NCBI GenBank assembly: GCA_002269645.1
Contig: NIVC01004191.1
Coordinates: forward strand, 1-55,866
Direction: 5' to 3'
Length of the DNA stretch: 55,866 nt
Source: Macrostomum lignano
Taxonomy: Eukaryota
The position numbers were made by a program, and so were the translations under genes. Of the stretch, positions 919-41,522 are shown one piece after another (position 1 is the stretch's first letter; every line of letters begins with the position of its first letter). Below the pieces are notes generated by a model that was given only the letters and a program-made list of their open reading frames with translations, did not search any database and was not told the origin of the DNA.

Positions 919-3900
919 ACTACATATCGCGCCAAAAGTGTTGATTTTCAGATGTTTTGACGCAAAAAACGCAAATTATACTACTATCTGAAAATGAAGT
1001 AAGTAGTATACAACAACGCTATCCTAAGCGTGATATGGCAATATGTAGTCGTAATAATCCATGTGCTCATATATGTACATTAATCCCATGTACTGCATTA
1101 ATCCCTATCTATCTCAAATTGTAAATGTACATTGTCTACTTCCATGTCTATCCCAATTCTACATGTGTATTGTCAACTTGTACAATCCTTCTATATGTAC
1201 ACTTGCGCATTAATCTACTTCTATGACAATTTTTATATGTACAGTACATTATGTACATTAATCCCCAATCTACACGACGGCCCCCGCTCTGCGTATTTGA
1301 ATCGTCAACCCCACAAGATTATATGTACAACTCGAAACACTAATTGTTACGTGTACAGCACAGTATATGCGCAGAGGTGGGTCGGTGTGTGCGCGCCAAC
1401 TGTACAATCTCACCTACTACCAAATGAGTCAACTAACATCCAAGTTTTACAGAACACGTCATATATGCATATTTATATGTGAATTACTCAAAACCAAATG
1501 TAACTGATTACGCCATACTACCATTAGTAGAGTTTACAAGTCGAGATTCTTACTGAAAAAGATTACATTCATAATTTTACATTTTTATATTGAAAAAGCT
1601 GATATCATGTTTATTTTCAACTATTTTCAATAGTATTTCAAAATATTTTCAAAATATTTTCAATATTTTCAATTTTCAATAGTTGAAACAGAGAGCATGC
1701 AGAAGCGCCCACCCACCCAAATTATACCCAAAATTTGCAAAGCGGCCGCACATCCAAGAATTAACTCTTCATATTCCGCTGACCCTCAAAAGCAAACAGT
1801 GTACGCAGAAACCGCCGCCCATCCCCAAAATTGGCGGAGGAGGCATGAGTTAGCCAAAAATTGCTGTCCACACTGTTATATCCACTCCTTTTATACTTCA
1901 TCCCTCTAGAATTCCGCCCTCGTCGCCACTCCGAGACAATTACGTCATTCCCAACCCCTCTCCCGAGTCAAAAAAGTTTTCAAAAAGACGTATATATATG
2001 ATACGTATACGATTTATTTAGTCGGCCTCTAAATTCAAGACTGTGAAAGCAATGTTTTATATGTTTCGTATCACAGTGCGGATGATACAAGACCCTTGTC
2101 GCACTTTATCCGCAAAATATGCCACTGACGCTGGTGTACACTATGGAATTAATTATGTTGCATGTTGAATCACCCTTTATCTCCGGCCATATTCAAAATT
2201 CAACCCCAAGACTTGTTCGAAAACATCCACCCCTCAGCAGACCCCTATATAGCAAATCGAATAGAACCACTCGTCCCTGTTTCTCTCTGCACCCTTCTAA
2301 ATGCCAAGGAATTTCGACCCCTCTCTCCATTTTCAGTGTACAAACAGATCTTTTCACAGCACGGACCCTATATTAAACCTCATTCAGCAAAACCCCTCTT
2401 CTCCAATTACGTCATCCATGCCGCCCCAGTTAGCAAGAAACTAACTTTCAATGCACACATCAACCCCACGAATCTGAGCAAATCCGAGTCAACCTCCAAC
2501 TGCATCGACCCAATACCCCTGCATCTGTCAATGTACACAGCCTATGAATCAGTGTCTCCTCTGCATACAATTCCGAGACTGAATTCTATAGATGTGTTTT
2601 GTCAAAGAAATACTTTGGCACTATAACCAATGCGGTATACTAGAAGTAGTGAAGTCCACCCGCCCAAAAACGTGCTGCTATGCCAATTCTATCGCTTCCA
2701 CTACCCTCTCACTAAAAGCTTTCAGACTCTATGAAAGTTCGATCGCTCGAAGCAGGAATGAAATACCCACGGACCTCTCCAAGTTGGAATTCCGTCATTT
2801 CATAAAAGGCGAATTTTCTCCTGTTTCTTTAATTTTAACATTAAAAGTTAGACTTTGTTGATCAAAATCAGTAATTTCATCACTGGAAACCATCATTTCA
2901 ACAGCTAATTTGCCCAAATGCCGTTTCAACTTTACTTGAGACGGCTTCGAAGCAAGAATGATCCCACACGGAAGTCCACAAGCCAGCCCAGCCTAAGAAA
3001 TGGTTAATAGAGGCTAAATTATTAGAAATGCAAACTTTTTTCATGAAAAACACGAGTTTTCCTCATTTTTTCGATTTTTAACGTTAAAATGCTTACTTTA
3101 TGGATCGAAATCTGTCATTTTATCAATAGAGATAATAATGTTAGCTAATTTGCACGTTTTTGGGCGGGTGGACTTCACTACTTCTAGTATACCGCATTGG
3201 TTATAGTGCCAAAGTATTTCTTTGACAAAACACATCTATAGAATTCAGTCTCGGAATTGTATGCAGAGGAGACACTGATTCATAGGCTGTGTACATTGAC
3301 AGATGCAGGGGTATTGGGTCGATGCAGTTGGAGGTTGACTCGGATTTGCTCAGATTCGTGGGGTTGATGTGTGCATTGAAAGTTAGTTTCTTGCTAACTG
3401 GGGCGGCATGGATGACGTAATTGGAGAAGAGGGGTTTTGCTGAATGAGGTTTAATATAGGGTCCGTGCTGTGAAAAGATCTGTTTGTACACTGAAAATGG
3501 AGAGAGGGGTCGAAATTCCTTGGCATTTAGAAGGGTGCAGAGAGAAACAGGGACGAGTGGTTCTATTCGATTTGCTATATAGGGGTCTGCTGAGGGGTGG
3601 ATGTTTTCGAACAAGTCTTGGGGTTGAATTTTGAATATGGCCGGAGATAAAGGGTGATTCAACATGCAACATAATTAATTCCATAGTGTACACCAGCGTC
3701 AGTGGCATATTTTGCGGATAAAGTGCGACAAGGGTCTTGTATCATCCGCACTGTGATACGAAACATATAAAACATTGCTTTCACAGTCTTGAATTTAGAG
3801 GCCGACTAAATAAATCGTATACGTATCATATATATACGTCTTTTGAAAACTTTTTTGACTCGGGGAGAGGGGTTGGGAATGACGTAATTGTCTCGGAGTG

Positions 3901-4910
3901 GCGACGAGGGCGGAATTCTAGAGGGATGAAGTATAAAAGGAGTGGATATAACAGTGTGGACAGCAATTTTTGGCTAACTCATGCCTCCTCCGCCAATTTT
4001 GGGGATGGGCGGCGGTTTCTGCGTACACTGTTTGCTTTTTGAGGGTCAGCGGAATATGAAGAGTTAATTCTTGGATGTGCGGCCGCTTTGCAAATTTTGG
4101 GTATAATTTGGGTGGGTGGGCGCTTCTGCATGCTCTCTGTTTCAACTATTGAAAATTGAAAATATTGAAAATATTTTGAAAATATTTTGAAATACTATTG
4201 AAAATAGTTGAAAATAAACATGATATCAGCTTTTTCAATATAAAAATGTAAAATTATGAATGTAATCTTTTTCAGTAAGAATCTCGACTTGTAAACTCTA
4301 CTAATGGTAGTATGGCGTAATCAGTTACATTTGGTTTTGAGTAATTCACATATAAATATGCATATATGACGTGTTCTGTAAAACTTGGATGTTAGTTGAC
4401 TCATTTGGTAGTAGGTGAGATTGTACAGTTGGCGCGCACACACCGACCCACCTCTGCGCATATACTGTGCTGTACACGTAACAATTAGTGTTTCGAGTTG
4501 TACATATAATCTTGTGGGGTTGACGATTCAAATACGCAGAGCGGGGGCCGTCGTGTAGATTGGGGATTAATGTACATAATGTACTGTACATATAAAAATT
4601 GTCATAGAAGTAGATTAATGCGCAAGTGTACATATAGAAGGATTGTACAAGTTGACAATACACATGTAGAATTGGGATAGACATGGAAGTAGACAATGTA
4701 CATTTACAATTTGAGATAGATAGGGATTAATGCAGTACATGGGATTAATGTACATATATGAGCACATGGATTATTACGACTACATATTGCCATATCACGC
4801 TTAGGATAGCGTTGTTGTATACTACTTACTTCATTTTCAGATAGTAGTATAATTTGCGTTTTTTGCGTCAAAACATCTGAAAATCAACCACTTTTGGCGC
4901 GATATGTAGT
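919..4910. mobile_element. Foldback-type non-autonomous DNA element: inverted arms 919-2675 and 3152-4910 around a 476-bp spacer
   Basis: Mirrored identical ORFs (2162-2626+/3201-3665-; 1132-1482+/4346-4696-). Only about two 1-bp indels noticed between arms. Termini ACTAC...GTAGT flanked by AGCAGC on both sides (3- or 6-bp TSD). No transposase seen. Confidence 0.85.
3880..3958 (+). promoter_or_regulatory. Outward-facing Pol II promoter-like motif set in the right foldback arm (mirror copy ~1869-1947 on the - strand)
   Basis: TGACGTAA (3880-3887), GGGCGG (3908-3913), TATAAAA (3932-3938) and a possible initiator ~20 bp downstream, in canonical order. Confidence 0.35.
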
Positions 4911-5917
4911 AGCAGCAGCCGCTATCCGTGCCCTCGGAGCATCCCATTTCTTCCCACAAAGGAGGGGTAACAATGTTGAGGTTGGAGCAAGAGAATAAAA
5001 TTATGGATCTAAGCATAAGAATGACTCTGAACTGAATACAATTTTTACATCGTCTTGGCTTTTTACTCGTATTGGCAAATGTGTACGAATATTCCGCAAA
5101 AAACATTGCCAGAAACACATGTAAAAAGATATACATGTAAAAATCTAAATGCAGTAGAAATGATTTCTTATGGCTTGAAAAAACCTTCTTTCCGGAAAAA
5201 TTTCCATTAAATTTCATTTATTGTCTGTACAGTGGTCTGTCTTGTATAGCGTACACAGATCAGCAGTACGGCGCTCTGGACTGGACAGTGAAAGTTCGTT
5301 AAGTGGGTTAGGAAAAATTTTGCGTCTTTCTATACTGTACATTCATGCTGGATGACAAGCGGAGGGTGTAGCGCCACGTACCACTTTGGAGAACGGATTT
5401 CGTCTCCCCCATCTCCCCTTCTTGGCTGCTCCACTGCAAATGCAACTGTCTTAAACAGTCCTTAGAATAATAATTTGGTAAAGTGCAGATTTCAGTAAGG
5501 CAAAACAGAACTTTCTGCTGCAAACATTCATACCAACCGGCCATTAAAGAGCATTTTGAAAGTGGATTCGTCTCATTTTGGCTGCTGACAGTACTTTCAA
5601 CTTGTATATAATGCTTGCACGAATAAATGCGCATTCTGGGCATACAAGGTACTAAAATATTGTATATAGCATTTTGAACAGTTAAAGCTGTACGTTGAAG
5701 TGAAATGAAAATTGGGTAAGAGAAATAAACGTCTACTATTACGTACATTCATACCTTCTACAATCACAGCTGAACATAATGGGAGCGCACAAGTCTCATT
5801 TTAAGCAGTAGACAGTACTTGAAGCTGGCATATAATGCATATATGCTTGCTCTTAAAGGCACATAAATGCTATAAATGTTTCACGAGCCAACAAGGAACT
5901 AAAACTTCCAACTATCC

Positions 5918-8546
5918 ATGACTAGCCTGCAGTCGTTAGACCAGCTGGAGTGCCATTTCACCTGGAAACCAGATGATAACTGCACAAACTCAAACATCGA
6001 TGAAGTGATCGAAAAGACGAAGAAAAAGATAAAGCGCGAGCCTCACAAAAAGGCCGCATACCTGGCAACCATAGCATACCTGTACACTCGCAGACGCGTC
6101 AAAAAGTTCGACTTGGCCAAGAAACATCTCGATGAAGCGTTGGAAATTGATGCACAAATACAGCAAGACAGTCAGGAAGACTGCATGGTGTCAAGCGAGT
6201 TGGTTATCAGGGCCGACATGCTGCACCTCAAGCAGCTGAGCAGAGGAAAAGGCAGGCCACTAAGACCTGAAGAACTCGAAACAGACATGCAGAGACTGAA
6301 CGAACTCTGGACTGACCCAAACAGCAAGGCTCGAGCGTTTGCAGCGAAGGGAGTCGCTTTCGACTGCTTTGGTCCAATGAAATACGCCATTGGCGCCAGT
6401 GCCTTCGCCGAGGCGTCAAGGATCCTATTGGACCACAGCAAGGCGTGCAACTTTACTGGCTCTATGGCGAAGCCTACTTAAGAGCTCGTTGCGATAGGCA
6501 GACGGCGAATAAACACGCTGACAGAGTTCAGTTGGACCTATGGAGAAGGGCAAAAGACGTCGGTGAGAAGAAAGGTCTCACGACGGCTACATTCTACGCG
6601 AACTATGCTGAAGCCATTCTGCACAACTACCGGTATTCCAGTCTGTGCCAAGGCTTGGCCGAAAAGGCTGCAAATCTTCTACTAGGAATGGATAAAGAGC
6701 AGAAAGAGCAGTCACAAGTCGTGTACATAATTTGCCTGAAAGTGTTTCGGTATCTTTTAAGAAAGTCAAACTCAAACAATTTAAAGGCCATTAGAAATCG
6801 GCTGTTTGAGGATGCTAAAGAAGTGGCAAGCGTATCTGACGATCCTGGATTCTTCCTTGAGCTTTCCAAAGAAGCTCTAAGCTCCGGCCATAAGAGGAGG
6901 CGGTCCAGCTGCTTGAAGAGGGCCAGGAAAAGCAGGTGAGCCGGGTCACATCTGGATTGAGTTGAAAATTATAGAGCTTCAGCGAGAACAATGGGGAAAA
7001 GACACAGCTGTAGACGCGTACGACTCTCTACGAGAAACCTTCAGGGTCTACAACAAAAATGTCGCCACAGTCGAGTTTTACAAGGCCATGTACCTAATAA
7101 AATTGGAGAAACAAAGGAGGCTGTAGAATCGTGCGTTGCTGCCTTTGAGCTGAGAAAACATTGGACCAAATATGGCCCAACCAGAAGGAAAACTTTCTTC
7201 GACTGCTGAACCAGAATCAGGAAGGGTTTGAAGAGTACCTGGCTTGGTATGCCGAAAACATCGGGACATTCAAAGTTCAGCTCGACGTCGAAGGCCTCTA
7301 CAGGACGGCTCTGGGGCGAGACGACAAAAACGATTTCGCTCTGGAGCATCTGGGTCGCCATTTTATGAAGAATGATGAATTTTCTAAGGCCGCTGCAAGT
7401 TTTAGAAAATTGTCCAGTGATTACGAGAACAAGCAAGCACTGATAGCTGAGTCGCTACTCAGAGACCCCGCCTCGGATTTGACGAAGTTGATGGAGTGTC
7501 TCGAGTGCGGATGTCGCGATGCGGCTCCTCGAATTTTCGACATTCTCGAGCGACGAAAGTCCGAACAGAAAACTGCCGAAAGGGTGATGGCGGATGCGTC
7601 AACATCATCTCAAGCTGGAAAAGACCCGCTGTTCTTCCGCCGAGAATTGTACGAGCTGTGCGCCAAGATCGAACTCACTCTGGACGATTCCAGCAGCTTC
7701 TTTATTGAAACTGAATTGGATTCGGACGATTTCAAGAAGTCTTTAAAGCTCAGAATTGCTGAGTTCTTGGAGCTCAATCTGCTAACGAGCAAGGCGGGCT
7801 CGACTCGGTCAGCTGAAGGCGCTGGCGATCGCGGAAACCTCATGAGATCGAATCGATTTCTCATGACGAAGCTGCAGATAAAAGAGACTGACATAGGACT
7901 TCAAGAAATGAACAACATGATCGTCTCGGTGCTGAAGGAGGCAAAGGAAGTCCTCGATCGGTCGCTGGCAGTTCGGCTTAAGGGATCGGGTCGAGAGTTT
8001 TCATACCCTCACGCGTTTGGCCAGTTAAAGAAGCAGCTTGGAGATGACTATAAAAAGCAGTTCAAACAGCTGAGTTCGGAGACAGAGCGGAAGGCATTCG
8101 AGCTCGAGTCGCTGATGAAGCTGCTCAAAGAAAACAAAGATGCTGCATCGCTTGAAAAGGTGCGAAAATGCCTGCTAGAAGAATTGAAGCGAATTGATCC
8201 CAACTTTCACCAATCGAGAGACACCAGAGACGTCTTTAACTTCATGGTGAGTCGTGAGCACAGAATTCTGTCAAGTGAGGACAGCTGGATTGTCCGCTGG
8301 GTCTACCCAGTAAACAGCGAGAAGCACTCGACTGAGATTGCAGTCAAGGGGCTCAATCAGCAGCTCAAATCTGATTGGTCGGGAGGCGGAGAGTGTCGAA
8401 GGGCGGCCTACGACGTGGCGCATCTGGCAGCAGAGTTCGCTGAGGAGACGTGGGCCGTCTTCTCCGATGGAGTTGGCGTCTCAAGTTTATCTGCTTCTGG
8501 TGCTCAGAACCAGAAGAATAAGTCTGAGTTGCAACGAGAGGCTTAA
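5918..8546 (+). CDS. Intronless IFIT-like TPR protein with extended C-terminus (~877 aa after repairing five -1 frameshifts); C-terminal ~7900-8470 putatively HEPN-like
   Basis: N-terminus SLDQLECHFTW matches the IFIT hallmark L.CHFTW. KGVAFDCFGPMKYAIGASAFAEA resembles IFIT [22 protein letters not shown]. Helical TPR-like segments follow. The ORF pieces 5918-6481, 6445-6939, ~6894-6960, ~6947-7125, ~7114-7209 and 7161-8546 join by successive -1 shifts with no stop on the joined path. TATAAAT at 5871. Confidence 0.75.
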
Positions 8547-9626: not shown

Positions 9627-10015
9627 TGTTCCCGAATTTTGATATTGAAAGACTTTGAGTGCCACTTTACCTGGCAACTCGGAGTGGCCTCATCAGCTCC
9701 GACTCCGGCCTGTAGAGTTAGACCATTCATAAATCCCTACTATAAGTAGAGTACACACCCAGTAAATTTATAAAAGCATGATGATGTTGCTATGTATGAC
9801 ACAAGAGATAAATCATGATTAGCTGAAAGAAGACGGGAACTTTCTGGTGGACCTGATTGCCGATAGTAAATTGATTATTAGGGCGCATCACTGTGTTAGA
9901 CTGAATAATTTTCGCAAAGAAAATCTGCACTCGTGTACGGCTACATGTAATTCCAGATTCGAAGAAGAGAACTACGCGCACTGGAACTACTATAAGAGGA
10001 GCCTGCAGCAACAGT
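9627..10015 (+). pseudogene. Degenerate N-terminal fragment of a second IFIT-like paralog
   Basis: LILKDFECHFTWQL (ECHFTW at 9657-9674). Downstream SKLIIRAH resembles SELVIRAD of the main gene. In-frame stops and frameshifts are present. Confidence 0.7.
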
Positions 10016-10077
10016 AAATGAGAAATAAATTGTTCCCTTGCAGACTTGCGGTCTGGAAGTGAGAGTTCGGGCGTTTA

Positions 10078-10555
10078 CACGTCTGCCTCCCGACCAATCA
10101 CAGCACAGCTGCTGATCGACCTCCTTCACTGCATGGAACCACGACAGTCAAGTGTTTCTCGCTGTTCACCAGGGAAGTGGTCAAACCAGCTGTCCTCACT
10201 AGAAAGAATTCAGAACAAGAACTTTACATAATTTCAAGCGATGCAGCATCTCTGCTTGTTTTCCGTAAGTAGCTTCATCAGCGACTCGAGCTTGAATGCC
10301 TTCCACTCTATCCAAACCCAGCTCGATAAACTGCTTAATATATAGTCGCAACGTCCAAGCTGCTTCTTCAATTAGCCAAACGCGTGAGAATATGAGCCCT
10401 AGACCCAGAATCATGGACGAATGAGTCCTTGAAATCTGCTATGCATGATTCATCCCTGAACATCCATGGTCCCTTGCATGTTCCTCGACCCGATCCTCTA
10501 ATTGTCGAACTGCCAGCGACCGATCGAGGACCTCCTTCGCCTCCTTCAGCACGAC
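10078..10555 (-). pseudogene. Inverted copy of the C-terminal (HEPN-like) region of the IFIT-like gene (corresponds to ~7925-8400)
   Basis: DNA-level matches such as GTGCTGAAGGAGGC.AAGGA.GTCCTCGATCGGTCGCTGGCAGTTCG, GGAAGGCATTC.AGCTCGAGTCGCTGATGAAGCT and GATTGGTCGGGAGGC. SEDSW and NSEKH (10166-10152) are retained. Indels disrupt the frame. Confidence 0.85.
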
Positions 10556-10932
10556 TTTACGGATTTTATTGCCACAAACCACTCGAATCTGAACAATTAC
10601 ATTGTGTTTCTAGAAGAATCATTGGCACTATCCAAAGCCTACCTGTCAGAGAAAATTTTTAGTATAAAAGCTGACGACAAATACAATGCAATGCTATCCT
10701 TGGTTTTTCGGAGATTTCCACAGCGCTGTAATTTTCTTCTTCTGTAGAAGCAGTTTAAGCATAGATCGAAGCAGAATTGTTTCCTTGCTTTCAAGAACAT
10801 AATCGTTGTTTATTTTTAAGTGCTCGTAGTTTTTTAAACAAACATACATAAGATTTCGTTAATTCCTTAATCGCTCATACTACGCTCGTATTGACGTTAC
10901 TTTCACAATTTCCCTAAAAAACTTACTTTATA

Positions 10933-13083: not shown

Positions 13084-16000
13084 CTACACTGCAACAACGG
13101 AGACGCTGTTGACAGACTCCGGCTGGTCAAACATTGGCGTTTGCGGCGGCAGCGGCGGCCCAGGCAGGTTGGCCAGTCGCACCAGGAAGTTGCGCCATTC
13201 AATTTCATCGTCAGGAACAGACAGCACAAACCGGTTGGCTTGTTGCCAGTTCACTCGCGACTGGGCCTTTTCGGTCAGGTCCACGCCTTCGTCCATGAGC
13301 ATGAGCACTTCGCAGCGTGGCTGACCGAAACAGGCCTTCAGCATGCGGCTCTCTAGACTGCTTGACTGGTCCAATTTGGCAGCCATGTCTGCGCCAATGA
13401 AGAATACCACGGCTCGGACTGAGGGCTGTGGGATTTCAGTGGGCGTCAGGTGAGGTTATGTAGGTGTCAGGTGAGTTCAGGTAGGTGTCAGGTGAGTTTC
13501 AGTAGGTTTCAGCGTGTCAGGTGAGGTTATGTAGGTGTCAGGTGAGTTTCAGTAGGTTTCAGGTGAGTTTAGCAGGTAGGTGTCAGGTGAGTTTCAGCAG
13601 GTTTCAGGTGAGTTTAGGTAGGTGTCAGGTGAGTTTCAGCAGGTTTCAGGTGAGTTTAGGTAGGTGTCAGGTGGGTGTCAGATGCGTCAAATGACTGTCA
13701 GGTGTCAGTAAATGTCAGATCAGCTCACATTATTGAGCTGCTCATTGGCGAACAGTGTCATTAGATTCTCGTCGCTGCCAAAATGCTGAGCCCTGGTGCA
13801 CTCGTCAGCGCAGTAGGGTGCCACGTACACCTGGTAATCGGCCAGGTTGACGGCCTCGGCGCGGTCCTGCTGAAACATGCAGATGAGGCGGCTCAAGTTG
13901 GTGCTCGGCTGACCGCCCGGGTATTCGTCAACAACCAGCACAGAGGAGCGCAGTCTGAGCACGAATTGCATAGCAACAGAGCTGGGACCGACGCCAGTCA
14001 TTCGGGCATTATTGGCCGGGTTGCACTGCTGCATGAGGCCGCGGAGGAAGCTGCGGATGAAGCCGGGCGGGCTGGGCTCCGCTGTCAGGGCGGGCTGGCC
14101 CAAGCAGAATGCGATGAGCTGGCCAAGGCGAAGCAGCTGGAAGCCGTCGCGAGGCTCCAGAATCGAGCGCAGGACCTCCTCAATTCTGCGGTCCCTGACC
14201 CGATCCAGGGCGGTGCGGAGAATCTCCGACTGCGGGTGGAGCAGAGGTGGGGGACAGAGTGAATTTGTGTCTGGTGGGTCACTCTATGCATGTGTCTGGT
14301 GTGTCACTCTATGCATGTGTCTGGTGGGTCACTCTATGCATGTGTCTGATGGGTCACTCTATGCATGTGTCTGGTGGGTCACTCTATGCATGTGTCTGGT
14401 GTGTCACTCTATGCATGTGTCTGGTGTGTCACTCTATGCATGTGTCTGGTGTGTCACTCTATGCATGTGTCTGGTGTGTCACTCTATGCATGTGTCTGGT
14501 GTGTCACTCTATGCATGTGTCTGGTGTGTCACTCTATGCATGTGTCTGGTGTGTCACTCTATGCATGTGTCTGGTGTGTCACTCTATGCATGTGTCTGGT
14601 GTGTCACTCTATGCATGTGTCTGGTGGGTCACTATATGCATGTGTCTGGTGTGTCACTCTATGCATGTGTCTGGTGTGTCACTCTATGCATGTGTCTGGT
14701 GGGTCACTCTATCCATGTGTCTGGTGGGTCACTCTATGCATGTGTCTGGTGGGTCACTCTATGCATGTGTCTGGTGTGTCACTCTATGCATGTGTCTGGT
14801 GTGTCACTCTATGCATGTGTCTGGTGTGTCACTCTATGCATGTGTCTGGTGTGTCACTCTATGCATGTGTCTGGTGTGTCACTCTATGCATGTGTCTGGT
14901 GTGTCACTCTATGCATGTGTCTGGTGGGTCACTCTATGCATGTGTCTGGTGGGTCACTCTATGCATGTCTGGTGTGTCACTCTATGCATGTGTCTGGTGT
15001 GTCTCTATGCATGTGTCTGGTGTGTCTCTATGCATGTGTCTGGTGGGTCACTCTATGCATGTGTCTGGTGGGTCACTCTATGCATGTCTGGTGTGTCACT
15101 CTATGCATGTGTCTGGTGTGTCACTCTATGCATGTCTGGTGTGTCACTCTATGCATGTGTCTGGTGTGTCACTCTATGCATGTGTCTGGTGTGTCACTCT
15201 GTGTTTTTTTGTGTCTGGTGTGTCACTCTGTGCTTTTTGTGTCTGGTGTGTCACTCTATGTATGTGGCTGGTGTGTCACTCTATGCATTTGTGTCTGGTG
15301 TCACTCTATGCTTTTTGTGTCTGGTGTCACTGTGCATTTGTGGATAGCTGCCGATCTGGGAGGGTTGCAGACTGACTCACTGTAGTCCTATACTGGTCCA
15401 GCTGGGTCAGCCCCGCGAGCTGCAGCAGACCCGAGTAGCCCCTGATGACGTTGCCCCGGTCAGCATCCCCCATTTTTTCGATGTAGCCATCAACCAGATG
15501 TCTGCGAGGCTGGAACGTGTCCGAGTTGAACAGGTCAAAGTTGGACAGCAGCAGGCTGCAGTGCAAGTCCCTCGTCAGCGTCTGGGCTGTTACAAAGCTC
15601 CCCGGCTGCAGGTAGCGCCGAAGGCTGTCGCTGCGAGTCACCCGGAACAAGTCTGTGATGCTCTGTCGCAACTCACGGTAGCGATCATCCTCAGCCATTG
15701 TGGTCATGAGCCTGCTCACGGTCACCTGTTGGAGAGGAGGGTTCAGCAGCCCTGCTTTCAGCAACAGATATTGATGAGGGACTGGCTGCCCAATTCACCC
15801 CATCCTGATGAGCTGGCTGCCCCATTCACCCCATCCTAATGAGCTGACTGCCCCATTCACCCCATCCTGATAGACTGGCTGCCCCATTCACCCCATCCTG
15901 GTGAGCTGACTGCCCTATTCACCCCATCCTGGTGAGCTGACTGCCCTATTCACCCCATCCTGGTGAGCTGACTGCCCCATTCACCCCATCCTGATAGACT

Positions 16001-17029
16001 GGCTGCCCCATTCACCCCATCCTGGTGAGCTGACTGCCCCATTCACCCCATCCTGGTGAGCTGACTGCCCCATTCACCCCATCCTGATAGACTGGCTGCC
16101 CCATTCACCCCATCCTGGTGAGCTGACTGCCCCATTCACCCCATCCTGGTGAGCTGACTGCCCCATTCACCCCATCCTGATAGACTGGCTGCCCCATTCA
16201 CCCCATCCTGGTGAGCTGACTGCCCCATTCACCCCATCCTGGTGAGCTGACTGCCCCATTCACCCCATCCTGGTGAGCTGACTGCCCCATTCACCCCATC
16301 CTGATAGACTGGCTGCCCCATTCACCCCATCCTGGTGAGCTGACTGCCCCATTCACGCCATCCTGGTGAGCTGACTGCCCCATTCACCCCATCCTGAATC
16401 CTGATAGACTGGCTGCCCCATTCACCCCATCCTGGTGAGCTGACTGCCCCATTCACCCCATCCTGATAGACTGGCTGCCCCATTCACCCCATCCTGATAG
16501 ACTGGCTGCCCCATTCACCCCATCCTGATAGACTGGCTGCCCCATTCACCCCATCCTGGTGAGCTGACTGCCCCATTCACCCCATCCTGATAGACTGGCT
16601 GCCCCATTCACCCCATCCTGGTGAGCTGACTGCCCCATTCACCCCATCCTGATAGACTGGCTGCCCCATTCACCCCATCCTGTTGAGCTGACTGCCTCAT
16701 TCACTCCTAATTTCATTCTTTCAGCAAATACTACAATATATACCTACCTGACTACTTTCAAAAATCCGGAAGAGAAACTCGTCAATGCTGGCAAAAGCAG
16801 ACTGATCCAACAGCTGCTTCTCAAGAACAAAATCCAGTTTAGCAATATCATCAATGCACAGCTGTTTGAAGCAATTAGAGAAACGTTCCAGGGCAGCGTG
16901 AGCAGTGCTGCTAAATTTATAGTAGCCTATCAAGACATCATCATAATCATATGATGTTATGGCACTAGGATGCTGTTGCAGATCTTGCGAGTCTTTCAGC
17001 AGTGGCTCATGCAAATTTTTGTCACTCAT
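13084..17029 (-). CDS. 4-exon orphan gene, 489 aa (exons 17029-16748, 15725-15381, 14229-13729, 13425-13084); putative C-terminal TIR/SEFIR-like fold, possible N-terminal death-fold
   Basis: All three introns are GT-AG and phase 0, and the joined 1470 nt is open. The C-terminus shows beta/alpha alternation (SVLVVDEY; YQVYVAPY; NEQLNNPSVRAVVFFIG; CEVLMLMD; VPDDEIEWRNFLVRLANL). Confidence refers to the gene model; the domain call is weaker (~0.35). Confidence 0.75.
13445..13720. repeat. Intronic minisatellite, ~20-21-bp unit (GTGTCAGGTGAGTTTCAGTAG variants)
   Basis: Tandem copies directly visible; fills intron 3 of the TIR-like gene. Confidence 0.85.
14267..15330. repeat. Intronic minisatellite, 25-bp unit TGTGTCTGGTG(T/G)GTCACTCTATGCA, ~40 copies
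   Basis: Tandem array; explains the spurious 25-aa periodic ORFs at 14012-15385. Confidence 0.97.
15781..16710. repeat. Intronic minisatellite, 31-bp unit CTGCCCCATTCACCCCATCCTG + (GTGAGCTGA or ATAGACTGG), ~30 copies
   Basis: Tandem array with two interspersed unit variants. Confidence 0.97.
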
Positions 17030-30300: not shown

Positions 30301-33300
30301 GACGGATCCATCTGGCTGTGCCTGGATTATCGCCGGCTAAATGAAGTAACCAGTCTTGACCCTTTCCACCGCCGCGAATGGATGAAACTTTAGAGGCGCT
30401 TGCAGGAAATGCTATTTTTTCAACTCTAGACTTGGAGAGAGTGTCTTGAACACTTGAGCAATTGTAATATTTGACAGAGGAGTAAAAATGAAGTACAAAA
30501 CTGGGTACACAAGTTTGAGTGAAAGGCTTTTACATATCAAAACAGTCCAGTCCGGTTATTGAGCGAGCTAAAAAAGTTAAAGTTGACGGCTAGCACCCCC
30601 CATGGCAAGCTGATTGTTCAGAGTAGGTTTTTGGGCCTTAATGTGTATAGCCTCTAATAAGCTAAGTTTGTTATCGTTCTTACAAAATTCTATAGTCAAT
30701 CATTTCGTATGGTTCAGTGTCACAGCAGCTCTTGCAGGTGAGCAAATGTTCATTAATGGCAGAGTTTTTTAGCCAATGTTCTCTAACCCTCGTGTACATG
30801 TGTCGTTTGGTCTTTCCTTTATAGGAAATGCTCTGGTCATCAGAGCAATTAAATTTGTAAACAAAACCTGCAGCGAGAGGTCGGGGCACACTGGATTTCT
30901 GATTCGATCTAAACTTAGCGATCTTTTCGGTGCGAAAGACAACAGGAATTTCAGCTTTGAGGTTTTTACGGAATAACTTTTTGATATTTTTAAAACTCAA
31001 TAGAGCAGAACGCTGAAAGTTTCTTTACCCGATTCGGTCGGCCAATCAAAAATAATATTGGGTGTCATCTTTTATTTCGTGCAGCCAGTGATTCACTTAA
31101 GAGTCTCACCGCCCCGTCCAGGTGGTCACAGCAACCGCCACCCTGGCTCTGGGCGTTCACATGCCCTGCAAAACTGTCGTATTCGCTAGCGACGACAAGT
31201 TTTTGGATGCGCTCAACTATCACCAGATGGCCGGTCGGTCTGGTCGACGCGGCTTCGACAACATCGGTAACATTGTGTTCTACGGCGTGCCCGCCTCCAA
31301 GATTGCTCACCTGATCCAAGCCGACCTGCCAGAACTGAAGGGCGGCTTTCCGCTTACCTGCGCTTTCGTTCTCAGACTGTTGCTACTGACTGGGAATGCC
31401 ACAGATCCCGAGGTGGCCCACAATCAAGCGGCTACGGTTTTGGAGCATCCGTTTGCTGCGCATCAGAGGCCGGATATGATGCAGCAATTACGATTGTTCT
31501 TTCTGTTTAGTGCAGAGTTTCTGTACGGGCAGGATCTTATTAATGAGTTGGGCGCTCCGCTGGTGAGTTTCATAGTGTTAATACTGTTGCACCAATGCAG
31601 GAACCTGTTTTTTTCCAAGCTGTATGCCATTTTATTTAAGTTCAGAATTTTCGTATTAAAATTTTTTTTTGATATCGGTATTTTAAGCAATTGCAATTTT
31701 CTGGGATCTCAAGACTTTTGCAACTTCTGCGTATCGGAGGAGAGACTCAGCGATGTAAAGCTGAGCTTTAAGGGTAAGGGTAAAGTCGTAAAGATATTGG
31801 GTGTTTGATTTGATTTTGAAAATTTTCACTGATTCTGAATTTCATTGTGGCATCCAGAGTTTGAATCCAGTATGCTAAATGGCACTGCGATTCTGACGCT
31901 TAAAATAACCATGTTTGCGTTGCTGACCCTGTCAGCTTTATCCTGCTGCACATTGCCTAACCCGATGAAAAATGCTACCTGCTTCGAGAAGAGTCCCAGA
32001 GTGTTGCAAGCAACACATGTGAAAAAGGAAATAAGTGACTCTAGACGACTTTGAAACGACGAGATGTCACGGTACAAGTCGCCAAAAAGTCGTCAAAGAG
32101 TCGCCTACGATTCAATTTGAAGCATTTAATTTTGAGACTATAAAACGACTCTACGGCGATGCAAGGGACTGTAGCGCTTCTATAATCACTATGGGGCTGC
32201 AGAGTATCTGAAGTCATTACAGTCTTGAGTCGTTAAAAAGTCACAAGAGTCGCCAGTGAGTTGTTTGCAATGAAGTAGAATGGTGTTTCTTCCCGGTTTA
32301 GGCACTTAAGATTACCTTAAGACTCGAGCCTCTTCAGTGGGAAGTTCTCTTAGCTCTCAGTAGCGTAGGTAGTGCTGCCACCAGTTCCTTCAGGTCTCGG
32401 CCTTCGGTGAGGTAAGCTTCCCGTCGGAACGAAATAACGAAGTCAACGAACACAGCACCAAGTGCAGATTTGCAGTTCAACGTACGAGGCGTCTCGTCAG
32501 CGGTACCTGCCGGGCTTGGTTGGTAGAGGGAGGGCTGAGTTAGCCTCTCGTAGGCTTAGGGCGCTTTAGTCGGGACTCAGTCAGACCAATAAGAACAGAA
32601 CTTAACGCACACAGATGGGCTGACACTCAGAACTCGCGGTTTCGGGAAAACGACTAGAAACTCAGAAAACTGGAAGCTCCTTGACGGAAACAAGGGGGAG
32701 GGGGGTCCTATTTATAGCCGGGAAACACCCGCGCACAAGACCTCGTGACTTGTTCTATTTTTAGAACTGACGTCACTTGAGAGTCTCGGGCAGGGTACTA
32801 GCGCGCGGAAGGCCTCGTGACTTGTTCTATTTTTAGAACTGACGTCACTTGAGGTCTCCGGCCAGAGTACACGCGGCTGTGACTCAGTTGCTATTTTAGC
32901 AACGAGTCACTCCTCTCCTTAGAGAAGGGAGGGGTCCGAAAGCACGTGATTCTCCCGGTAAACAGGGCCAACAGTAAACATGTTTACTGCACTTTAGGAC
33001 TCGAAGAACGCAGAGTCTGTCATGTGACTTGCTCACATGACAGAGGAAAACGGGACGGGAACGAAACAGAGACAGCCCACAGCCCACAGCAGAGAAGCTG
33101 AGGGCTGAGAACAGAGACGCAGAAGGGCAGAACAGGCCAAGGGCAGCAACAGACGGGCCAAGGGGGGCGGGAAGCTGACCAGCGGCAGACAGCAACCCAG
33201 GGCGAGGGCGAGGGAGACTGCTGACAAAGTGGGACGCCTAACATCAACTAGCGGATCACTACAGCAATGACTCTAGCAATTCTTGTCACGGTAAATTTAT

Positions 33301-35347
33301 CAACGGTATACGAATACTATTCGGCCATTCTCCAGGACCTGGCCGGCCTAGTGTGCCACATGGGCTACCTGCAGCCTGGCAACTTTGTGCTTACCTATCT
33401 GCTACGAACTCCCGCTCTGCGCCAGCTGTGCGAGCCAGCCAGCAATCAGCTGCCGCCGATTCACTACGAATTCTATTGCGTCGGCTGTCAGACTGATGAA
33501 CCGATAGTTGGTCAGAGATTCAAGTGCACCAAGTGCTGGTCTGACTACAGCCTGTGCGCCAGCTGCTACTCTGGCCGCCCTAATCACAGCCGGGGCTGGG
33601 AGCAGCAGCACACGGCCGCAGATTTTGAGCTTCAATTGCCGCCTTTGCGAGTGCAATTCACCTACAAAACGTTGAGGAAATTGGTTCGAATCCTGTGCCT
33701 CCTGTTCACTAAAATGGAGTTGCCCCGGTCTCTGGTTAAAAAGACGGCTGATGGAATTCTGCATTATGCCAGGTAAAAAGCTCTTCGATTTTTTGCTAGA
33801 ATTTCACCTACTCTCGCACCGCGCCACGACTCCTGGCTCGATTCCGTGCGCAAACACAGATTTTAGGGCTTGTGCACAAAAATTAGCCTTGGGGCTGTCC
33901 TACGTGTCTTAACCCGGGTCGGTTCGGGTGTCCAGCCCAAGTACAATACGATGGTACCTGCAGGCGTTGTGACGCTCTGCCAATATGGTATTACTGTACC
34001 AGGTTGCTCGTAAGTATGGTATATAGGGTTCGCTCTCCCGGCGTTATGACGTAGAATTTACTGTAATCTATCAAGCTTCCCAGGAAAGACTGAGTTCAAT
34101 CAGGCGGCTTACCGGTAGCCAAGTTATGAGATGCACGTTTGCCCTTTTTGGATCGTTGTCGATTTATTTGACGCGTTGAACCACTTGAAACTTTGTTCAG
34201 GTCGCAGTAGGAGCGAGAAAACCCCGAGAAAAAAAAGGGGGCGAGTCAGAAAAACCTGGGCCCAAATAAATAAATACCACCACAGGCCTACGTTTAGGGG
34301 AGGGGGGGCAGACGGCCTCACCGGCTAAGCCCACAAAGATTAGAGCAAAAAACAAACGCGCAACTGGTCAGCCAATCAAAACCCCGCCTAGGGAGGAGGG
34401 GCCGCACCCGCGCCAAAGACGGCCCAGCCGCAAGCCAACCAGCCCTGAGCACGGGGCAGGGGGGGGGGCACGGCTGGGGCCGCCAGCCAGACCCTGCCAC
34501 GCCCGCCAACCCCCCCCCCCTAGCCAGCCCCAAAGTGCATCGCGCCCTGCAAACCGGCAAGGGCGCATGCACTACATACGATTCACAGCCACAGCCATGA
34601 GGACCAGTCCCTCAAGGCACAGAATGTACATGCCTGACTATTAGAAAGCCAGGGCCGCTGTACACCTTGTATGAGTGCGAGCCTGCTTACAGTACCATCT
34701 CTCCTTTACTGATTTCTAGGCCAACCGAGAACTCCAAGGTGCTTCTGAAGCCGCTGCCAACCGATATTGAATCAGCAGTCCGTGACTACAACTCGGCCAC
34801 AGCTGTGACTTACACCAACTACCTGCGCTGCATTGCCGATTCTGGCCTGTTGAAATTCTCTACCGCTCTGCCGTTCAGCCAATCCGCTCCCATTGTGCCT
34901 AGCAGCGATCGCCAGCTCCAAGTGTCAGCGGTGGCTCCTCTGGCTCGGCTATCCTGGGGTCCCACCACTCCTGATTCTAACGAAGCACTTCGTCGCGTGC
35001 TATTGAACAGCGGTAATAACAGCTCGGAACAGTTGCGTCGCCTGTTGCCATTGGAGATTGTCACCGATGCCAATTTGATTCCGCTGCTGCCTACGAAGCG
35101 ACTGTTAAACGCCTACGCTTTGGACTTTTTCACTCACTGCAGTCGGGCTTCGATTGTTCGCGATAATGGAATTCGGGAGGGCGACTTGTTCGACTTGCTC
35201 AAAGACTTCTCACTGGCCTGCAGGGCCGTGGCGAATTTGCTGACTCAGCTGGCCGCTGATCCCGACGATCCGGTGGTCTGCGCCTTCAAACAGGTGGCAT
35301 TCGAGTACAAAGCGCGCTTTCGTCGAGCCTTCCCTGGCGCGCGTTGA
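27327..35347 (+). CDS. DDX60: DDX60-like Ski2-family RNA helicase, C-terminal half (exons ~27327-27902, 31122-31562, 33336-33772, 34720-35347) with an inserted ZZ zinc finger
   Basis: RLPALVF; GVCYHHAG...VEMLFRSGHLQ|VVTATATLALGVHMPCKTVVF...LDALNYHQMAGRSGRRGFD; LAGLVCH; SKVLL; LNAYALDFFTH...DN...EGD...LLKDFSL. All match the DDX60 motif order, and splice phases are compatible (0,0,2). The start of the first exon is approximate. Confidence 0.9.
28660..30435 (+). mobile_element. Ty3/Gypsy fragment (gag double zinc knuckle, protease, 5' RT) in the DDX60 intron; frameshifted and truncated
   Basis: CGRCFEITHTTQQC and CNYCNRPGHKQARC; CLLDSGSSISL; PPRRIP...WVSPVMHVRKKDGSIWLCLDYRRLN...IFSTLDL. Confidence 0.9.
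30435..31000 (-). mobile_element. Penelope-like element 3' remnant (GIY-YIG endonuclease)
   Basis: FVYKFNC...SYKGKTKRHMYTRVREH...SAINEHLLTC, then LLEAIHIKAQKPTLNNQ, the typical PLE C-terminus. Confidence 0.85.
32271..33243 (-). mobile_element. Probable solo LTR (~970 bp) in the DDX60 intron
   Basis: Minus strand starts TGTTA and ends CA; TATAAAT at ~32708-32714; internal ~40-bp duplication containing TGACGTCA; flanks GCAA/TCAA (imperfect TSD). Confidence 0.45.
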
Positions 35348-39411: not shown

Positions 39412-41522
39412 TTAGCCCATCGAGCAGTAGTCCTGCAGCTGCTGGAACTCCAGTCCGGTGAGGCTACGACTGCTCATACCGTAGCAGCGGATTGTGCCCT
39501 TGAAACTCCTATCATCTTCCAGGCTATAGCCTAGTCGCAGACACCCGAAGCGACTCGCAGCAGCGCTCCCAATGCTTCCATTTTGCGTTGGCTCCGCGTA
39601 CGTGATGCTTCCGTTAAAATAAAATTTCACACTTTCGGCGTTGGCGGCGAACGAATAGCCAACTGAGATTAAACTGGTTGAGTCATCGTTAGTAAACAGG
39701 TTGTAAGCTGACCAACGTTGATACTGGAAATATCCGTTCATCCAATGAAAATAGGCGTACAATGAACGGCTATATTTTGCCCAAGTACTAGCCGATTGGG
39801 TTCCGTCGCATTGTTGAATCCGGTGGTAGAAATTGTAGCTGAAAGTTTAGTCACTCGTCAGATTTTTTCTATGAACAATTGTTACACCATAACCCCTCCT
39901 CACTCTCTGCCCTAAGTCCCCTATCTTATCCCTCCCTGCCCCAGCCCCCATGTCACTCTGCCCCAGTCCCCCAACTCACCTCTTGCCCTAGTCCCCTTCC
40001 TCCCTCCCTGCCCCAGTACCCACCCTACTTCTTGTCCTAGTCCCCAACCTCACTTCTTGCTCCAGTCCCCCTCCTCACTCCCTGCCCAGCCCCCACCTCA
40101 CTCTCTACACCAGCCCCACCTCACTCCCTCCCCCAGCCCCCAACCTCACTCCCTACCACATTCCCCCTCCTCACTCCCTGTCCCAGTCCCCTACCTCCCT
40201 GCCCCAGTCCCCTACATGTACCTCCCTCCCTGCCCCAGTACCCCACTCTACTTCATGTCCTAGTCCCCCTCCTCACTCCCCTGCCCCAGTCCCCCTCCTC
40301 ACTCCCCTGCCCCAGTCCCCCTCCTCACTCCCTGCCCAGCCCCCTCCTCACTCCCTGCCCCAGTCCCCCTCCTCACTCCCTGCCCAGCCCCCTCCTCACT
40401 CCCTGCCCCAGTCCCCCTCCCCACTCCCTGCCCAGCCCCCTCCTCACTCTCTGCACCAGCCCCCCACCTCACTCCCTGCCTCAGTCCTCCAGATCCTTAT
40501 TCTCTTCTCCACTTATCTATACACTTTATCTGTATCCTAATTGATCTCTAGCCAATTAAAAGATTGTCAAGAAAGTGTTGAAATATTGTCTCACCCGCTC
40601 GTCATGTTATGCCTAGCTAGCATGTAGAATGAATAATTTCTATTAAAGTCCAAATCGTGCTCAAGGCCAGGCGTCTTAGCAATCAGATAGGAATCATTGT
40701 GCCCCATCAGCTGGGCACCGTCGGTCCCAAGGTTCACGTTGCGAGCGGTGAGGCAATACTGCCTTGGATTCACCTCGTTCAGTAAGCCGCTGTGCGTGAA
40801 TCGGTAAAACATTTTCATCTGCAGCTGGCTCAGTAGACCAGCGTTTTCTGAAAAATAGGCAAGGTACGTTACGACAATGACTCTATCCTTAACGTGGGAG
40901 AAGTGTAGAGTCAGAGTATCGTCTGGGTTTCTTTCGCTGACCAAGAAGCGACACTGCCCTGCCCACATCAAATCTTGTATAACTTTAGTCTTCTCCATGT
41001 TTAAATTGACACACAAACAACGGATAAACGAGTTTCTGAGCATCTTTTCACACAAGTTGGCTTGCTGAAACAACCTTGTCTTGAATTTTTGTGTGAATCA
41101 AGAATATTGATTGGACCAAACTGCAAGAATCAGTGTCGCTTTTTCGCAGAGAAAATAGTGTTCCTTGGCAGATTCATTCGTGCTAGCCACTTACTAGAAG
41201 CACCCGTATGCTGATAAGTGTCGCAGCTTCCAGATGTCCATTGTTCCTCTGTCGAGCAGGAGTCGCCAGTGTAGCACAGCCGAGTGTCCGGATCAAAGTG
41301 GAAGGCGTCACAAAGCGGCTGCAGGCTGCAGTGCACCGAGCACTCAGCGTTGCTTCCAACGTTGGACGCCGCAATCACTGCAGCGTCGGTGGGGCAGAGC
41401 GAAGTGCGTTGGAATGTCAGACTGTCCGTTTGGAAGCCGAGAGCAGAAGACAGCTGGCAGCAGCATGTCATTAGCATGGCAATCGGTAGACATAGCTTTG
41501 TAATTCGCGGGTAGCGATGCAT
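39412..41522 (-). CDS. Secreted PAN/Apple + LamG/concanavalin-like domain protein, 406 aa (exons 41522-41195, 41060-40595, 39838-39412)
   Basis: Hydrophobic signal-like N-terminus; SNAECSVHCSLQPLCDAFHFDPDTRLC (PAN); GHNDSYLI...LDF and LRLGYSLEDDRSFKGTIRC...LTGLEFQQL (LamG-like). GT-AG junctions give an open 1221 nt. Confidence 0.8.
39890..40490. repeat. C-rich intronic minisatellite (CCCCAGTCCCCCTCCTCACTCCCTG-like units)
   Basis: Tandem degenerate copies directly visible. Confidence 0.9.

What the first reader, a model, noticed from the sequence alone, without database searches (positions are those of the whole stretch)
5918..8546. IFIT-like TPR sensor fused to a putative HEPN-like ribonuclease domain
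Seen: the IFIT hallmark ECHFTW at 5948-5965 and a second IFIT-like TPR motif, but the repaired protein (~877 aa) is almost twice the length of vertebrate IFITs (~480 aa). The extra C-terminus shows IVSVLKEAKEVLDRSL...FSYP...DSW...VNSEKH followed by a terminal helix. Inference: this matches my recollection of HEPN-like families with an (LR)..LD...FP...W..L..L.N..KH pattern. Established: IFITs bind viral RNA 5' ends, and HEPN domains are RNases (RNase L, Ire1, Cas13). A one-chain RNA sensor plus RNase would be an RNase L-like antiviral effector in an invertebrate without known interferons.
Basis: partly seen in the sequence, partly recalled or inferred. Interest (0 to 1): 0.88.

Follow-up and report, generated by a model that had tools for sequence, protein, structure and literature searches.

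The report
IFIT-like flatworm gene, no HEPN domain

Summary
The sequence features are real. ECHFTW lies at 5948-5965. An 877-codon frame runs 5918-8546 if five 1-nt gaps are bridged, with no internal stops. IVSVLKEAKEVLDRSL, FSYP, DSW and NSEKH lie where stated.

The gene belongs to a rare family of all-helical proteins of about 860-1100 aa: 27 cluster representatives among 1.84 billion proteins. The only named members are Macrostomum lignano hypothetical proteins. The others come from one or more unidentified eukaryotes in two ENA assemblies. Copies sit in tandem arrays.

The first ~175 residues align in register with IFIT5 and IFIT1 (HMMER E 6e-5; hhalign 78%, E 1.7e-5), so "IFIT-like" holds for the N-terminus.

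The C-terminal ~220 residues are the best-conserved part (N..KH in 15 of 16 members; dN/dS 0.24). They fail every HEPN test I could run:
- no conserved Rx4-6H motif;
- no HEPN hit in Pfam, PADLOC or PDB sequences;
- a confident AlphaFold model (pLDDT 85) matches only generic TPR solenoids in Foldseek, none significantly.

Best reading: an IFIT-related helical-repeat protein with a novel, uncharacterised C-terminal helical domain. This copy is either a young pseudogene or mis-assembled. An RNase L-like sensor-nuclease is not supported.

The parts
5918..8546 (+). Whole single-exon coding region. Conceptual product is 877 aa after bridging five 1-nt frame breaks, with no internal stop codon.
5948..5965 (+). 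ECHFTW, part of SLDQLECHFTW. This is the IFIT N-terminal signature. E, C, F and W are invariant in the family.
5930..6430 (+). N-terminal region that aligns in register with IFIT1/IFIT5 residues ~12-179 (roughly IFIT subdomain I; that naming is from my memory of the IFIT structures).
6416..7160 (+). Central helical-repeat (TPR-like) stretch holding all five frame breaks: ~6416-6455, 6892, 6927-6930, 7103 and 7150-7159. Three of the five fall at A4 runs. The best TPR of the paralogues (P0002 384-412, TPR_2 38.6 bits) falls across the break at 7103.
7161..7490 (+). Last TPR-like helices (RPEY.AWF and FALEHLG motifs). At synonymous sites this stretch is very diverged from P0028 (pS 0.80).
7494..7673 (+). 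Conserved family motifs ECLxxGxxD (7494-7520) and LFF...YExCAxIE (7623-7673) that link the repeats to the tail. From about 7490 onward the copy becomes ~85% nt identical to the M. lignano gene for P0028, which suggests a gene-conversion boundary.
7824..8480 (+). Conserved C-terminal all-helical domain (repaired residues 638-856). It is family-specific, with no match to any known family or fold.
8253..8300 (+). REHxI...E.xW...W block. E, I and both W are invariant in 16 sequences.
8313..8327 (+). N-S-E-K-H. N, K and H are present in 15 of 16 members, and the residue before N is never Arg. In the model N lies at the end of a helix and K-H in the following loop.
8406..8447 (+). Last helix, AYDVAHLAAEFAEE. 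The conserved residues Y/D, H, E and E are spaced i, i+4, i+7, which puts them on one helical face. The small residues A..AA..A lie on another face.
9968..10560 (-). Heavily decayed fragment of a second copy of the C-terminal domain, lying tail-to-tail with the main gene. VLKEAKEVLDRSLAVR, ILSSEDSW, LVNSEKH and DWSGG are still readable, with stops and frameshifts in both directions.

Best explanation
The locus is one copy of a lineage-restricted, tandemly duplicating family of all-helical proteins of about 880 aa, from a Macrostomum-type flatworm.

Architecture (shown):
- an N-terminal cap homologous to the IFIT N-terminus (LxxLECHFTW plus about 160 further residues);
- a TPR-like helical array;
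- a strongly conserved, family-specific C-terminal helical region of about 330 residues, whose last ~220 residues carry a set of near-invariant polar residues (RE-H, E, N..KH, Y/D..H...E..E).

Mechanism (inferred). The protein acts as IFITs do, as a stoichiometric binder of RNA or another cytoplasmic ligand inside a helical clamp. The C-terminal domain packs onto the repeat array as a lid, ligand-binding site or oligomerisation module. It is not a HEPN nuclease. RGG-repeat tails on two paralogues suggest an association with RNA. Tandem arrays, gene conversion and decayed copies fit a fast-turnover gene family of the defence type.

State of this copy. Its frame is interrupted by five single-base gaps, so it is either a very young pseudogene or a correct gene in an under-polished long-read assembly. 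I cannot tell which.
For: Family and architecture:
- An exhaustive HMMER scan found 27 representatives. The full-length ones are 862-1117 aa and share both ends.
- The named members are all M. lignano hypothetical proteins.
- The genes are single-exon and arranged in tandem arrays.

IFIT link.

TPR: the paralogues pass the Pfam cut-offs (P0002 TPR_2 38.6 bits, P0028 TPR_1 28.3 bits).

One compact helical body: the AlphaFold model built on a 27-sequence alignment has pLDDT 84.7 and pTM 0.84 and is all alpha.

The C-terminal domain is conserved and constrained: see the invariant residues and dN/dS of 0.24 against P0028.

Not HEPN.

RGG tails: P0002 and P0020.

Frame breaks: all five are of the same kind, there are no stops, and three of five fall at A4 runs. 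By contrast, the neighbouring true pseudogene fragment has stops and shifts in both directions. A near-perfect 1.7-kb palindrome close to the contig end could be a long-read assembly artefact.
Against: - No experiment or expression data bear on function, and the RNA-binding and immune roles are pure inference.
- The IFIT homology is moderate (78% hhalign probability) and covers only ~175 of 877 residues.
- The IFIT5 triphosphate-contacting K150 aligns with a Cys, and T37 and Q41 with Lys, in the HMMER alignment. The IFIT RNA 5'-end pocket is therefore not evidently kept.
- A stripe of near-invariant His, Glu, Asn and Lys residues looks more like an active or metal site than a passive lid.
- Foldseek was run on the whole 461-residue model, not on the isolated domain. 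AlphaFold DB was not available.
- The taxon of most family members is unknown.
Confidence: 0.5

Rival explanations
1. One reading: a one-chain IFIT-type RNA sensor fused to a HEPN (RNase L/Ire1-like) ribonuclease, with NSEKH as the catalytic motif.
For: N..KH is near-invariant (15 of 16 members). The N-to-H spacing equals that of the RNxxxH motif of KEN/HEPN domains (my knowledge of Ire1 and RNase L). The domain is all-helical and under purifying selection.
Against: - The defining Arg is absent. The residue before N is D, V, I or Q, and there is no conserved Rx4-6H anywhere in the domain.
- No HEPN, KEN or 2-5A-RNase family appears in Pfam for any of 16 members at E<=10, in PADLOC, or in a profile search of all PDB sequences.
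- Foldseek against PDB returns only generic helical repeat proteins, none significant.
- One lineage (P0013/P0031) has lost N..KH while keeping the rest of the domain.
Confidence: 0.05
2. The C-terminal domain is a new, non-HEPN enzymatic or metal-binding effector. This would make the protein a sensor-effector fusion of a previously undescribed kind.
For: The invariant or near-invariant residues are E (of RE), N, K, H, H and two E. In the last helix H, E and E are spaced i, i+4, i+7, so they lie on one helical face. This is the most conserved part of a family that is otherwise only ~25% identical. dN/dS is 0.24.
Against: - There is no similarity to any known catalytic fold or family.
- Conserved buried polar networks also occur in non-enzymatic helical bundles.
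Confidence: 0.22
3. A generic TPR scaffold protein unrelated to IFIT function or immunity. The CHFTW cap would be a shared structural capping motif or a convergence.
For: - Beyond residue ~175 only generic TPR similarity is detected.
- The single sequences P0007 and P0002 do not retrieve IFITs from PDB.
- The IFIT pocket residues are not kept.
- Liu et al. 2013 (PMC3688568) found no IFITs outside jawed vertebrates.
Against: - Nine of eleven residues are identical at the same N-terminal position.
- IFITs are the top or only PDB hits for the window's first ORF and for the family profile.
- The hhalign alignment is in register over 163 columns.
- Tandem arrays and gene conversion are typical of defence gene families.
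- M. lignano also carries several Mx genes (PMC11789081).
Confidence: 0.18
4. On the state of this copy only: it is a dead pseudogene rather than an assembly error.
For: All five frame breaks are clustered in 750 bp, while the 1.9 kb of flanking CDS is clean. A truly decayed sister fragment lies 1.5 kb away. Gene conversion from a P0028-like copy could have refreshed only the 3' part.
Against: All five breaks are 1-nt losses, there is not a single stop codon in 877 codons, and three of five breaks fall at A4 runs. The contig also carries a near-perfect palindrome that could be a long-read assembly artefact.
Confidence: 0.4

Closest known systems
Vertebrate IFIT1/IFIT5 (interferon-induced proteins with tetratricopeptide repeats)
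   Same: N-terminal SLxQLxCHFTW motif at the same position. About 165 residues align in register. All-helical and TPR-containing. Intron-poor genes in tandem clusters (IFIT clustering is from my own knowledge and from PMC3688568).
   Different: Almost twice as long (877 aa against ~480 aa). Similarity beyond residue ~175 is only generic TPR. The IFIT5 triphosphate-contacting residues K150, T37 and Q41 are not conserved in the alignment. It carries an extra conserved C-terminal region of ~330 residues with no counterpart in IFIT1. No interferon system is known in flatworms.
HEPN/KEN ribonuclease domains (RNase L, Ire1, Cas13, Csm6)
   Same: All-helical. An N-x-x-x-H spacing like the RNxxxH motif of KEN domains, lying at a helix-loop junction.
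   Different: No Arg and no conserved Rx4-6H. No sequence-profile or structural match.
Macrostomum lignano hypothetical proteins BOX15_Mlig031348g1 (P0028), BOX15_Mlig030191g2 (P0002) and BOX15_Mlig019237g1 (P0020)
   Same: True paralogues or orthologues. P0028 is 76% aa identical over the last 461 residues, and 85% nt identical over 7230-8474. P0002 is 63% identical over the first 169 residues. The architecture is the same.
   Different: Those genes are intact. They carry low-complexity tails (RGG repeats in P0002 and P0020, GEATGVQA repeats in P0028) that the window copy lacks. P0020 lacks the IFIT-like N-terminus.
Pfam DUF1722 (E. coli YbgA)
   Same: P0028 scores 29.2 bits, above the 22.5-bit cut-off. 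The window copy scores 17-19 bits, over the LKEAKEVLDRSL...YPHA stretch.
   Different: Only 1 of 16 family members hits. hhalign of the family profile against E. coli YbgA gives 0.03% probability. I treat the hit as spurious.

Membership tests
IFIT | N-terminal L-x-x-L-x-C-H-F-T-W motif within the first ~25 residues | tested here: met
   SLDQLECHFTW at residues 5-16 (5930-5965) aligns with IFIT1 13-23. E, C, F and W are invariant in 7 full-length members.
IFIT | Detectable homology to IFITs beyond generic TPR similarity | tested here: met
   The family profile's best PDB hit is IFIT5, E 6.1e-5. hhalign against IFIT1 gives 78.5% and E 1.7e-5 over 163 columns. This holds only for the first ~175 residues.
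IFIT | Tetratricopeptide repeats | tested here: met
   The paralogues pass the Pfam cut-offs (P0002 TPR_2 38.6 bits, P0028 TPR_1 28.3 bits). The window copy itself stays below the cut-off, because its best TPR is split by the frame break at 7103.
IFIT | A protein of ~460-490 aa made only of TPR-like helices | tested here: not met
   877 aa, with ~330 extra conserved C-terminal residues that show no similarity to IFIT1.
IFIT | RNA 5'-end pocket residues (IFIT5 E33, T37, Q41, K150, as I recall them from the IFIT5 structure papers) | tested here: inconclusive
   In the HMMER alignment E33 aligns with an acidic residue, T37 and Q41 with Lys, and K150 with Cys. The alignment is too weak to be decisive.
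IFIT | Induction by interferon or virus, and binding of PPP or cap0 RNA | not testable with these tools
   No expression or biochemical data are available.
HEPN | Conserved Rx4-6H catalytic motif | tested here: not met
   At most 3 of 16 sequences have R.{4,6}H at any alignment column. N..KH is preceded by D, V, I or Q.
HEPN | Profile match to a HEPN, KEN or 2-5A-RNase family, or to a solved HEPN protein | tested here: not met
   Pfam on the window and on 16 members at E<=10, PADLOC, NCBIfam, and a profile search of all PDB sequences all gave nothing.
HEPN | Structural similarity to HEPN four-helix bundles | tested here: not met
HEPN | Metal-independent endoribonuclease activity | not testable with these tools
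   This needs an assay.
DUF1722 (YbgA) | Family-wide match to the Pfam model or to YbgA | tested here: not met
   Only P0028 passes the cut-off, 1 of 16 members hits, and hhalign against E. coli YbgA gives 0.03%.

The most novel reading that the evidence does not exclude
IFIT-type proteins predate vertebrates. In flatworms and at least one other, unidentified invertebrate, an IFIT-derived ligand sensor has been joined to a previously undescribed helical domain. That domain's near-invariant Glu, Asn, Lys and His residues would form a new catalytic or metal site, giving a single-chain sensor-effector of interferon-independent antiviral immunity. It would not be HEPN, but it would work in the spirit of RNase L.
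Probability: 0.17. Interest if true: 0.75.

Novelty: new variant of a known kind. Interest (0 to 1): 0.42.

Why it matters
The one dedicated survey I could read (PMC3688568) concluded that IFITs arose with jawed vertebrates and the interferon system. A flatworm family that keeps the IFIT N-terminal signature would support the view that 'interferon-stimulated' effectors are older than interferon. M. lignano also has several Mx genes (PMC11789081), which points the same way.

The attached C-terminal domain is conserved, under selection and unlike anything catalogued. It is therefore a concrete target for structure and function work. The specific and more exciting claim, an RNase L-like HEPN nuclease, does not survive testing and should not be propagated.

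Tried and rejected
- HEPN/KEN: rejected on the motif, on profiles and on Foldseek.
- DUF1722: one paralogue is above the Pfam cut-off, but the family profile has no similarity to E. coli YbgA. Spurious.
- Weak chance hits, all set aside. Zebrafish interferon 3piv (E 0.009, a K/E-rich helix). RNase A against P0007 (E 0.11). Hemerythrin TIGR00058 in the TPR part of P0007 (E 0.043). LmuB in P0024.
- RNase III-like, HD, hemerythrin-like and ferritin-like readings of the conserved His/Glu pattern. I considered these from memory, and none is supported by any search.
- C-terminal domain against IFIT1: no similarity.
- Word-indexed homologue searches found only the window's own ORF or M. lignano proteins.
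- Pattern scans for the C-terminal domain in prokaryotic genomes, JGI metagenomes and IMG/VR found no relatives.
- The single-sequence AlphaFold model was useless (pLDDT 37).
- Literature searches for the M. lignano locus tags, the ENA accessions, and invertebrate IFITs gave nothing relevant.
- The taxon of the ENA contigs (ERZ25074608 and ERZ26859043) could not be established.
- A weak direct repeat upstream of the ATG (5576-5614 and 5800-5838, 74% identity) was not pursued.
Full report
**What is in the sequence**

The window is a metazoan contig. It carries fibronectin-III, ankyrin, ZZ and PAN domain ORFs, and no Rfam hits.

At 5918 (+) an ATG opens a frame that encodes MTSLQSLDQLECHFTW, with ECHFTW at 5948-5965. 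The mechanical ORF list shows four pieces in different frames. The last is an intact 461-codon ORF, 7161-8546.

A frameshift-aware alignment to the two closest homologues shows five breaks. Each is a codon with one base missing. They lie at about 6416-6455, 6892, 6927-6930, 7103 and 7150-7159. There is no sign of introns, and the homologous genes elsewhere are also single exons.

**Relatives**

The word-indexed search found only the window's own ORF. The exhaustive HMMER scan of 1.84 billion cluster representatives found 27 proteins at E<=1e-3.

Full-length members are 862-1117 aa. They share both the N-terminal LECHF(T/K/N)W and the C-terminal block ARREHHII..EAAWH..W....N..KH ... TAYDVAH.AAEFAEQT.

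The only named members are Macrostomum lignano hypothetical proteins:
- BOX15_Mlig030191g2 = P0002, 63% identical over the first 169 residues.
- Mlig031348g1 = P0028, 76% aa identical over the last 461 residues and 85% nt identical over 7230-8474.
- Mlig019237g1 = P0020.

So the window comes from M. lignano or a close relative (inference). The three whose contigs I fetched lie on high-coverage contigs of two ENA assemblies, with about 38% GC, and their organism could not be identified.

The genes lie in tandem arrays: three copies in 22.7 kb of the M. lignano scaffold, two in L003 and at least four in L004. The window itself carries a second, badly decayed fragment of the C-terminal domain on the minus strand at about 9968-10560. 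No relatives were found in prokaryotic genomes, JGI metagenomes or IMG/VR by pattern scan.

**The N-terminus**

The first ORF alone hits only IFIT1 chains in PDB (E 0.006). SLDQLECHFTW aligns with SLEQLRCHFTW at the same position.

A profile of seven N-terminal halves has IFIT5 as its best PDB hit (E 6.1e-5). Family 6-174 aligns with IFIT5 13-175, and there are two weaker colinear stretches. The IFIT1 N-terminal fragment 4hou scores E 0.004. The remaining hits are designed consensus TPRs that match a single repeat.

hhalign of the profile against human IFIT1 gives 78.5% probability and E 1.7e-5 over 163 columns.

Paralogues pass the Pfam TPR cut-offs. The window copy does not, because its best TPR is cut by the frame break at 7103. 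Single sequences of more distant members do not retrieve IFITs.

In the HMMER alignment IFIT5 K150 aligns with a Cys, T37 and Q41 with Lys, and E33 with an acidic residue. That these are the triphosphate-contacting residues is from my memory of the IFIT5 structure papers.

Conclusion: the first ~175 residues are probably homologous to the IFIT N-terminus. I put that at about 0.8. The IFIT RNA-end pocket is not evidently conserved. Strict membership of the IFIT family fails on size and architecture.

**The C-terminus**

With a 27-sequence alignment, AlphaFold gives a confident all-alpha model of the last 461 residues: pLDDT 84.7 and pTM 0.84. The high pTM implies one compact body rather than independent beads. 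The single-sequence model was useless.

Foldseek against PDB finds nothing at E<=1e-3. The 50 best hits (E 0.005-0.12, TM 0.12-0.24) are mostly TPR and other helical repeat proteins (consensus TPRs, OGT, SPY, APC/C and the like), with a few unrelated helical proteins, and none is a HEPN protein. BFVD gives the same picture.

Sequence-based searches of the last ~220 residues (16 sequences, alignment A2) agree:
- A profile search of all PDB sequences at E<=10 gives only two chance matches.
- None of the 16 members hits any HEPN, KEN or RNase family in Pfam at E<=10.
- PADLOC and NCBIfam give nothing.
- No column of the alignment carries an Rx4-6H in more than 3 of 16 sequences.

The DUF1722 match that gave P0028 its UniProt name is above the cut-off only in that protein. 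It is not supported by a profile comparison with E. coli YbgA (0.03%).

The domain is nevertheless real and constrained. L, E, I, W, W, E and E are invariant. N, K, H, A, H, A and F are near-invariant. N..KH is kept in 15 of 16 members and is lost in P0013/P0031. In the last helix Y/D, H, E and E fall on one face (inference from the spacing and). dN/dS against P0028 is 0.24 over the domain.

The HEPN interpretation is therefore not supported. The domain is an uncharacterised helical module with a possible ligand, metal or catalytic site.

**State of this copy**

Several points favour single-base under-calls in a long-read assembly:
- All five breaks are 1-nt losses.
- Three of five coincide with A4 runs.
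- There are no stops in 877 codons.
- The nearby genuine pseudogene fragment shows stops and shifts of both signs.
- The contig carries a 1.74-kb, 99-100% perfect palindrome near its end.

On the other hand, the five breaks cluster in 750 bp. Synonymous divergence from P0028 also drops abruptly from saturation (pS 0.80) to 0.10-0.20 at about 7490. That indicates gene conversion of the 3' part, which could equally have refreshed a dying gene. I leave this at roughly 60:40 in favour of assembly error or very recent inactivation.

**Mechanism and comparison**

Shown: the architecture, the IFIT-like cap, the family-specific conserved tail, the tandem arrays and gene conversion, the RGG tails in two paralogues, and the absence of every HEPN hallmark that I could test.

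Inferred: an IFIT-like binding role, probably for RNA, in a fast-evolving, defence-type gene family. The tail would serve as lid, ligand site or oligomerisation module.

A non-HEPN enzymatic tail remains a live alternative, at about 0.2.

The literature I could reach holds no description of this family. One survey reported no IFITs outside jawed vertebrates (PMC3688568). M. lignano is reported to have at least six Mx genes (PMC11789081), so ISG-type genes in this animal have a precedent.

**Verdict**

This is a real, rare and unannotated protein family, best filed as a new variant of the IFIT/TPR kind with a novel C-terminal domain. The RNase L-like sensor-nuclease reading is not supported. 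Interest is moderate.

Noticed in passing
window 9968-10560 (-), possibly to 10858: Decayed tail-to-tail fragment of a second family copy, C-terminal domain only. VLKEAKEVLDRSLAVR, ILSSEDSW, LVNSEKH and DWSGG are still readable, and it carries stops and frameshifts of both signs.
   Followed up: partly
window 940-2675 and 3152-4888: Near-perfect (99-100%) inverted repeat with arms of ~1.74 kb around a 476-nt spacer, about 1 kb upstream of the gene and close to the contig end. It is either a foldback element or a palindromic long-read assembly artefact. The two 154-aa ORFs (2162-2626 + and 3201-3665 -) are mirror images of each other.
   Followed up: partly
window ~7490: Abrupt change in synonymous divergence from the M. 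lignano P0028 gene, from pS 0.80 upstream to 0.10-0.20 downstream. The 5' part of the gene is closer to P0002, which suggests gene conversion or recombination between paralogues.
   Followed up: partly
window 45703-55226 (-): A run of long ORFs full of fibronectin type III domains, a large FN3-repeat gene. Several neighbouring ORFs are in the same frame and separated only by a stop (for example at 46513 and 48422). These could be short introns, errors or nonsense mutations.
   Followed up: no
window 43514-44203 (+), 33267-33776 (+), 41130-41522 (-): ORFs with ankyrin repeats, a ZZ zinc finger and a PAN domain respectively. These are other metazoan genes on the contig.
   Followed up: no
window 14266-15311, 15782-16704, 39893-40491, 13434-13681: Large minisatellites: a 25-mer x42, a 31-mer x29.5, 25/48-mer arrays and 21/42-mer arrays. 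The long 'ORFs' at 14012-15385 are translations of the 25-mer array.
   Followed up: no
window 5697-5712 (+): GAAGTGAAATGAAAAT about 210 nt upstream of the ATG resembles an IRF/ISRE-type half-site (AANNGAAA). It is quite possibly chance, and I did not test it against background.
   Followed up: no
L002 (M. lignano NIVC01000347.1), L003, L004: Family genes lie in tandem arrays next to retroelement ORFs (RVT_1, rve). L004 holds at least four copies in 21.7 kb, one of them with a duplicated C-terminal domain (P0003).
   Followed up: partly
P0002, P0020, P0028, P0024 (paralogues): Variable low-complexity or extra tails follow the conserved domain: RGG/RG repeats in P0002 and P0020, GEATGVQA repeats in P0028, and a Cys-rich C-terminus in P0024.
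   Followed up: no
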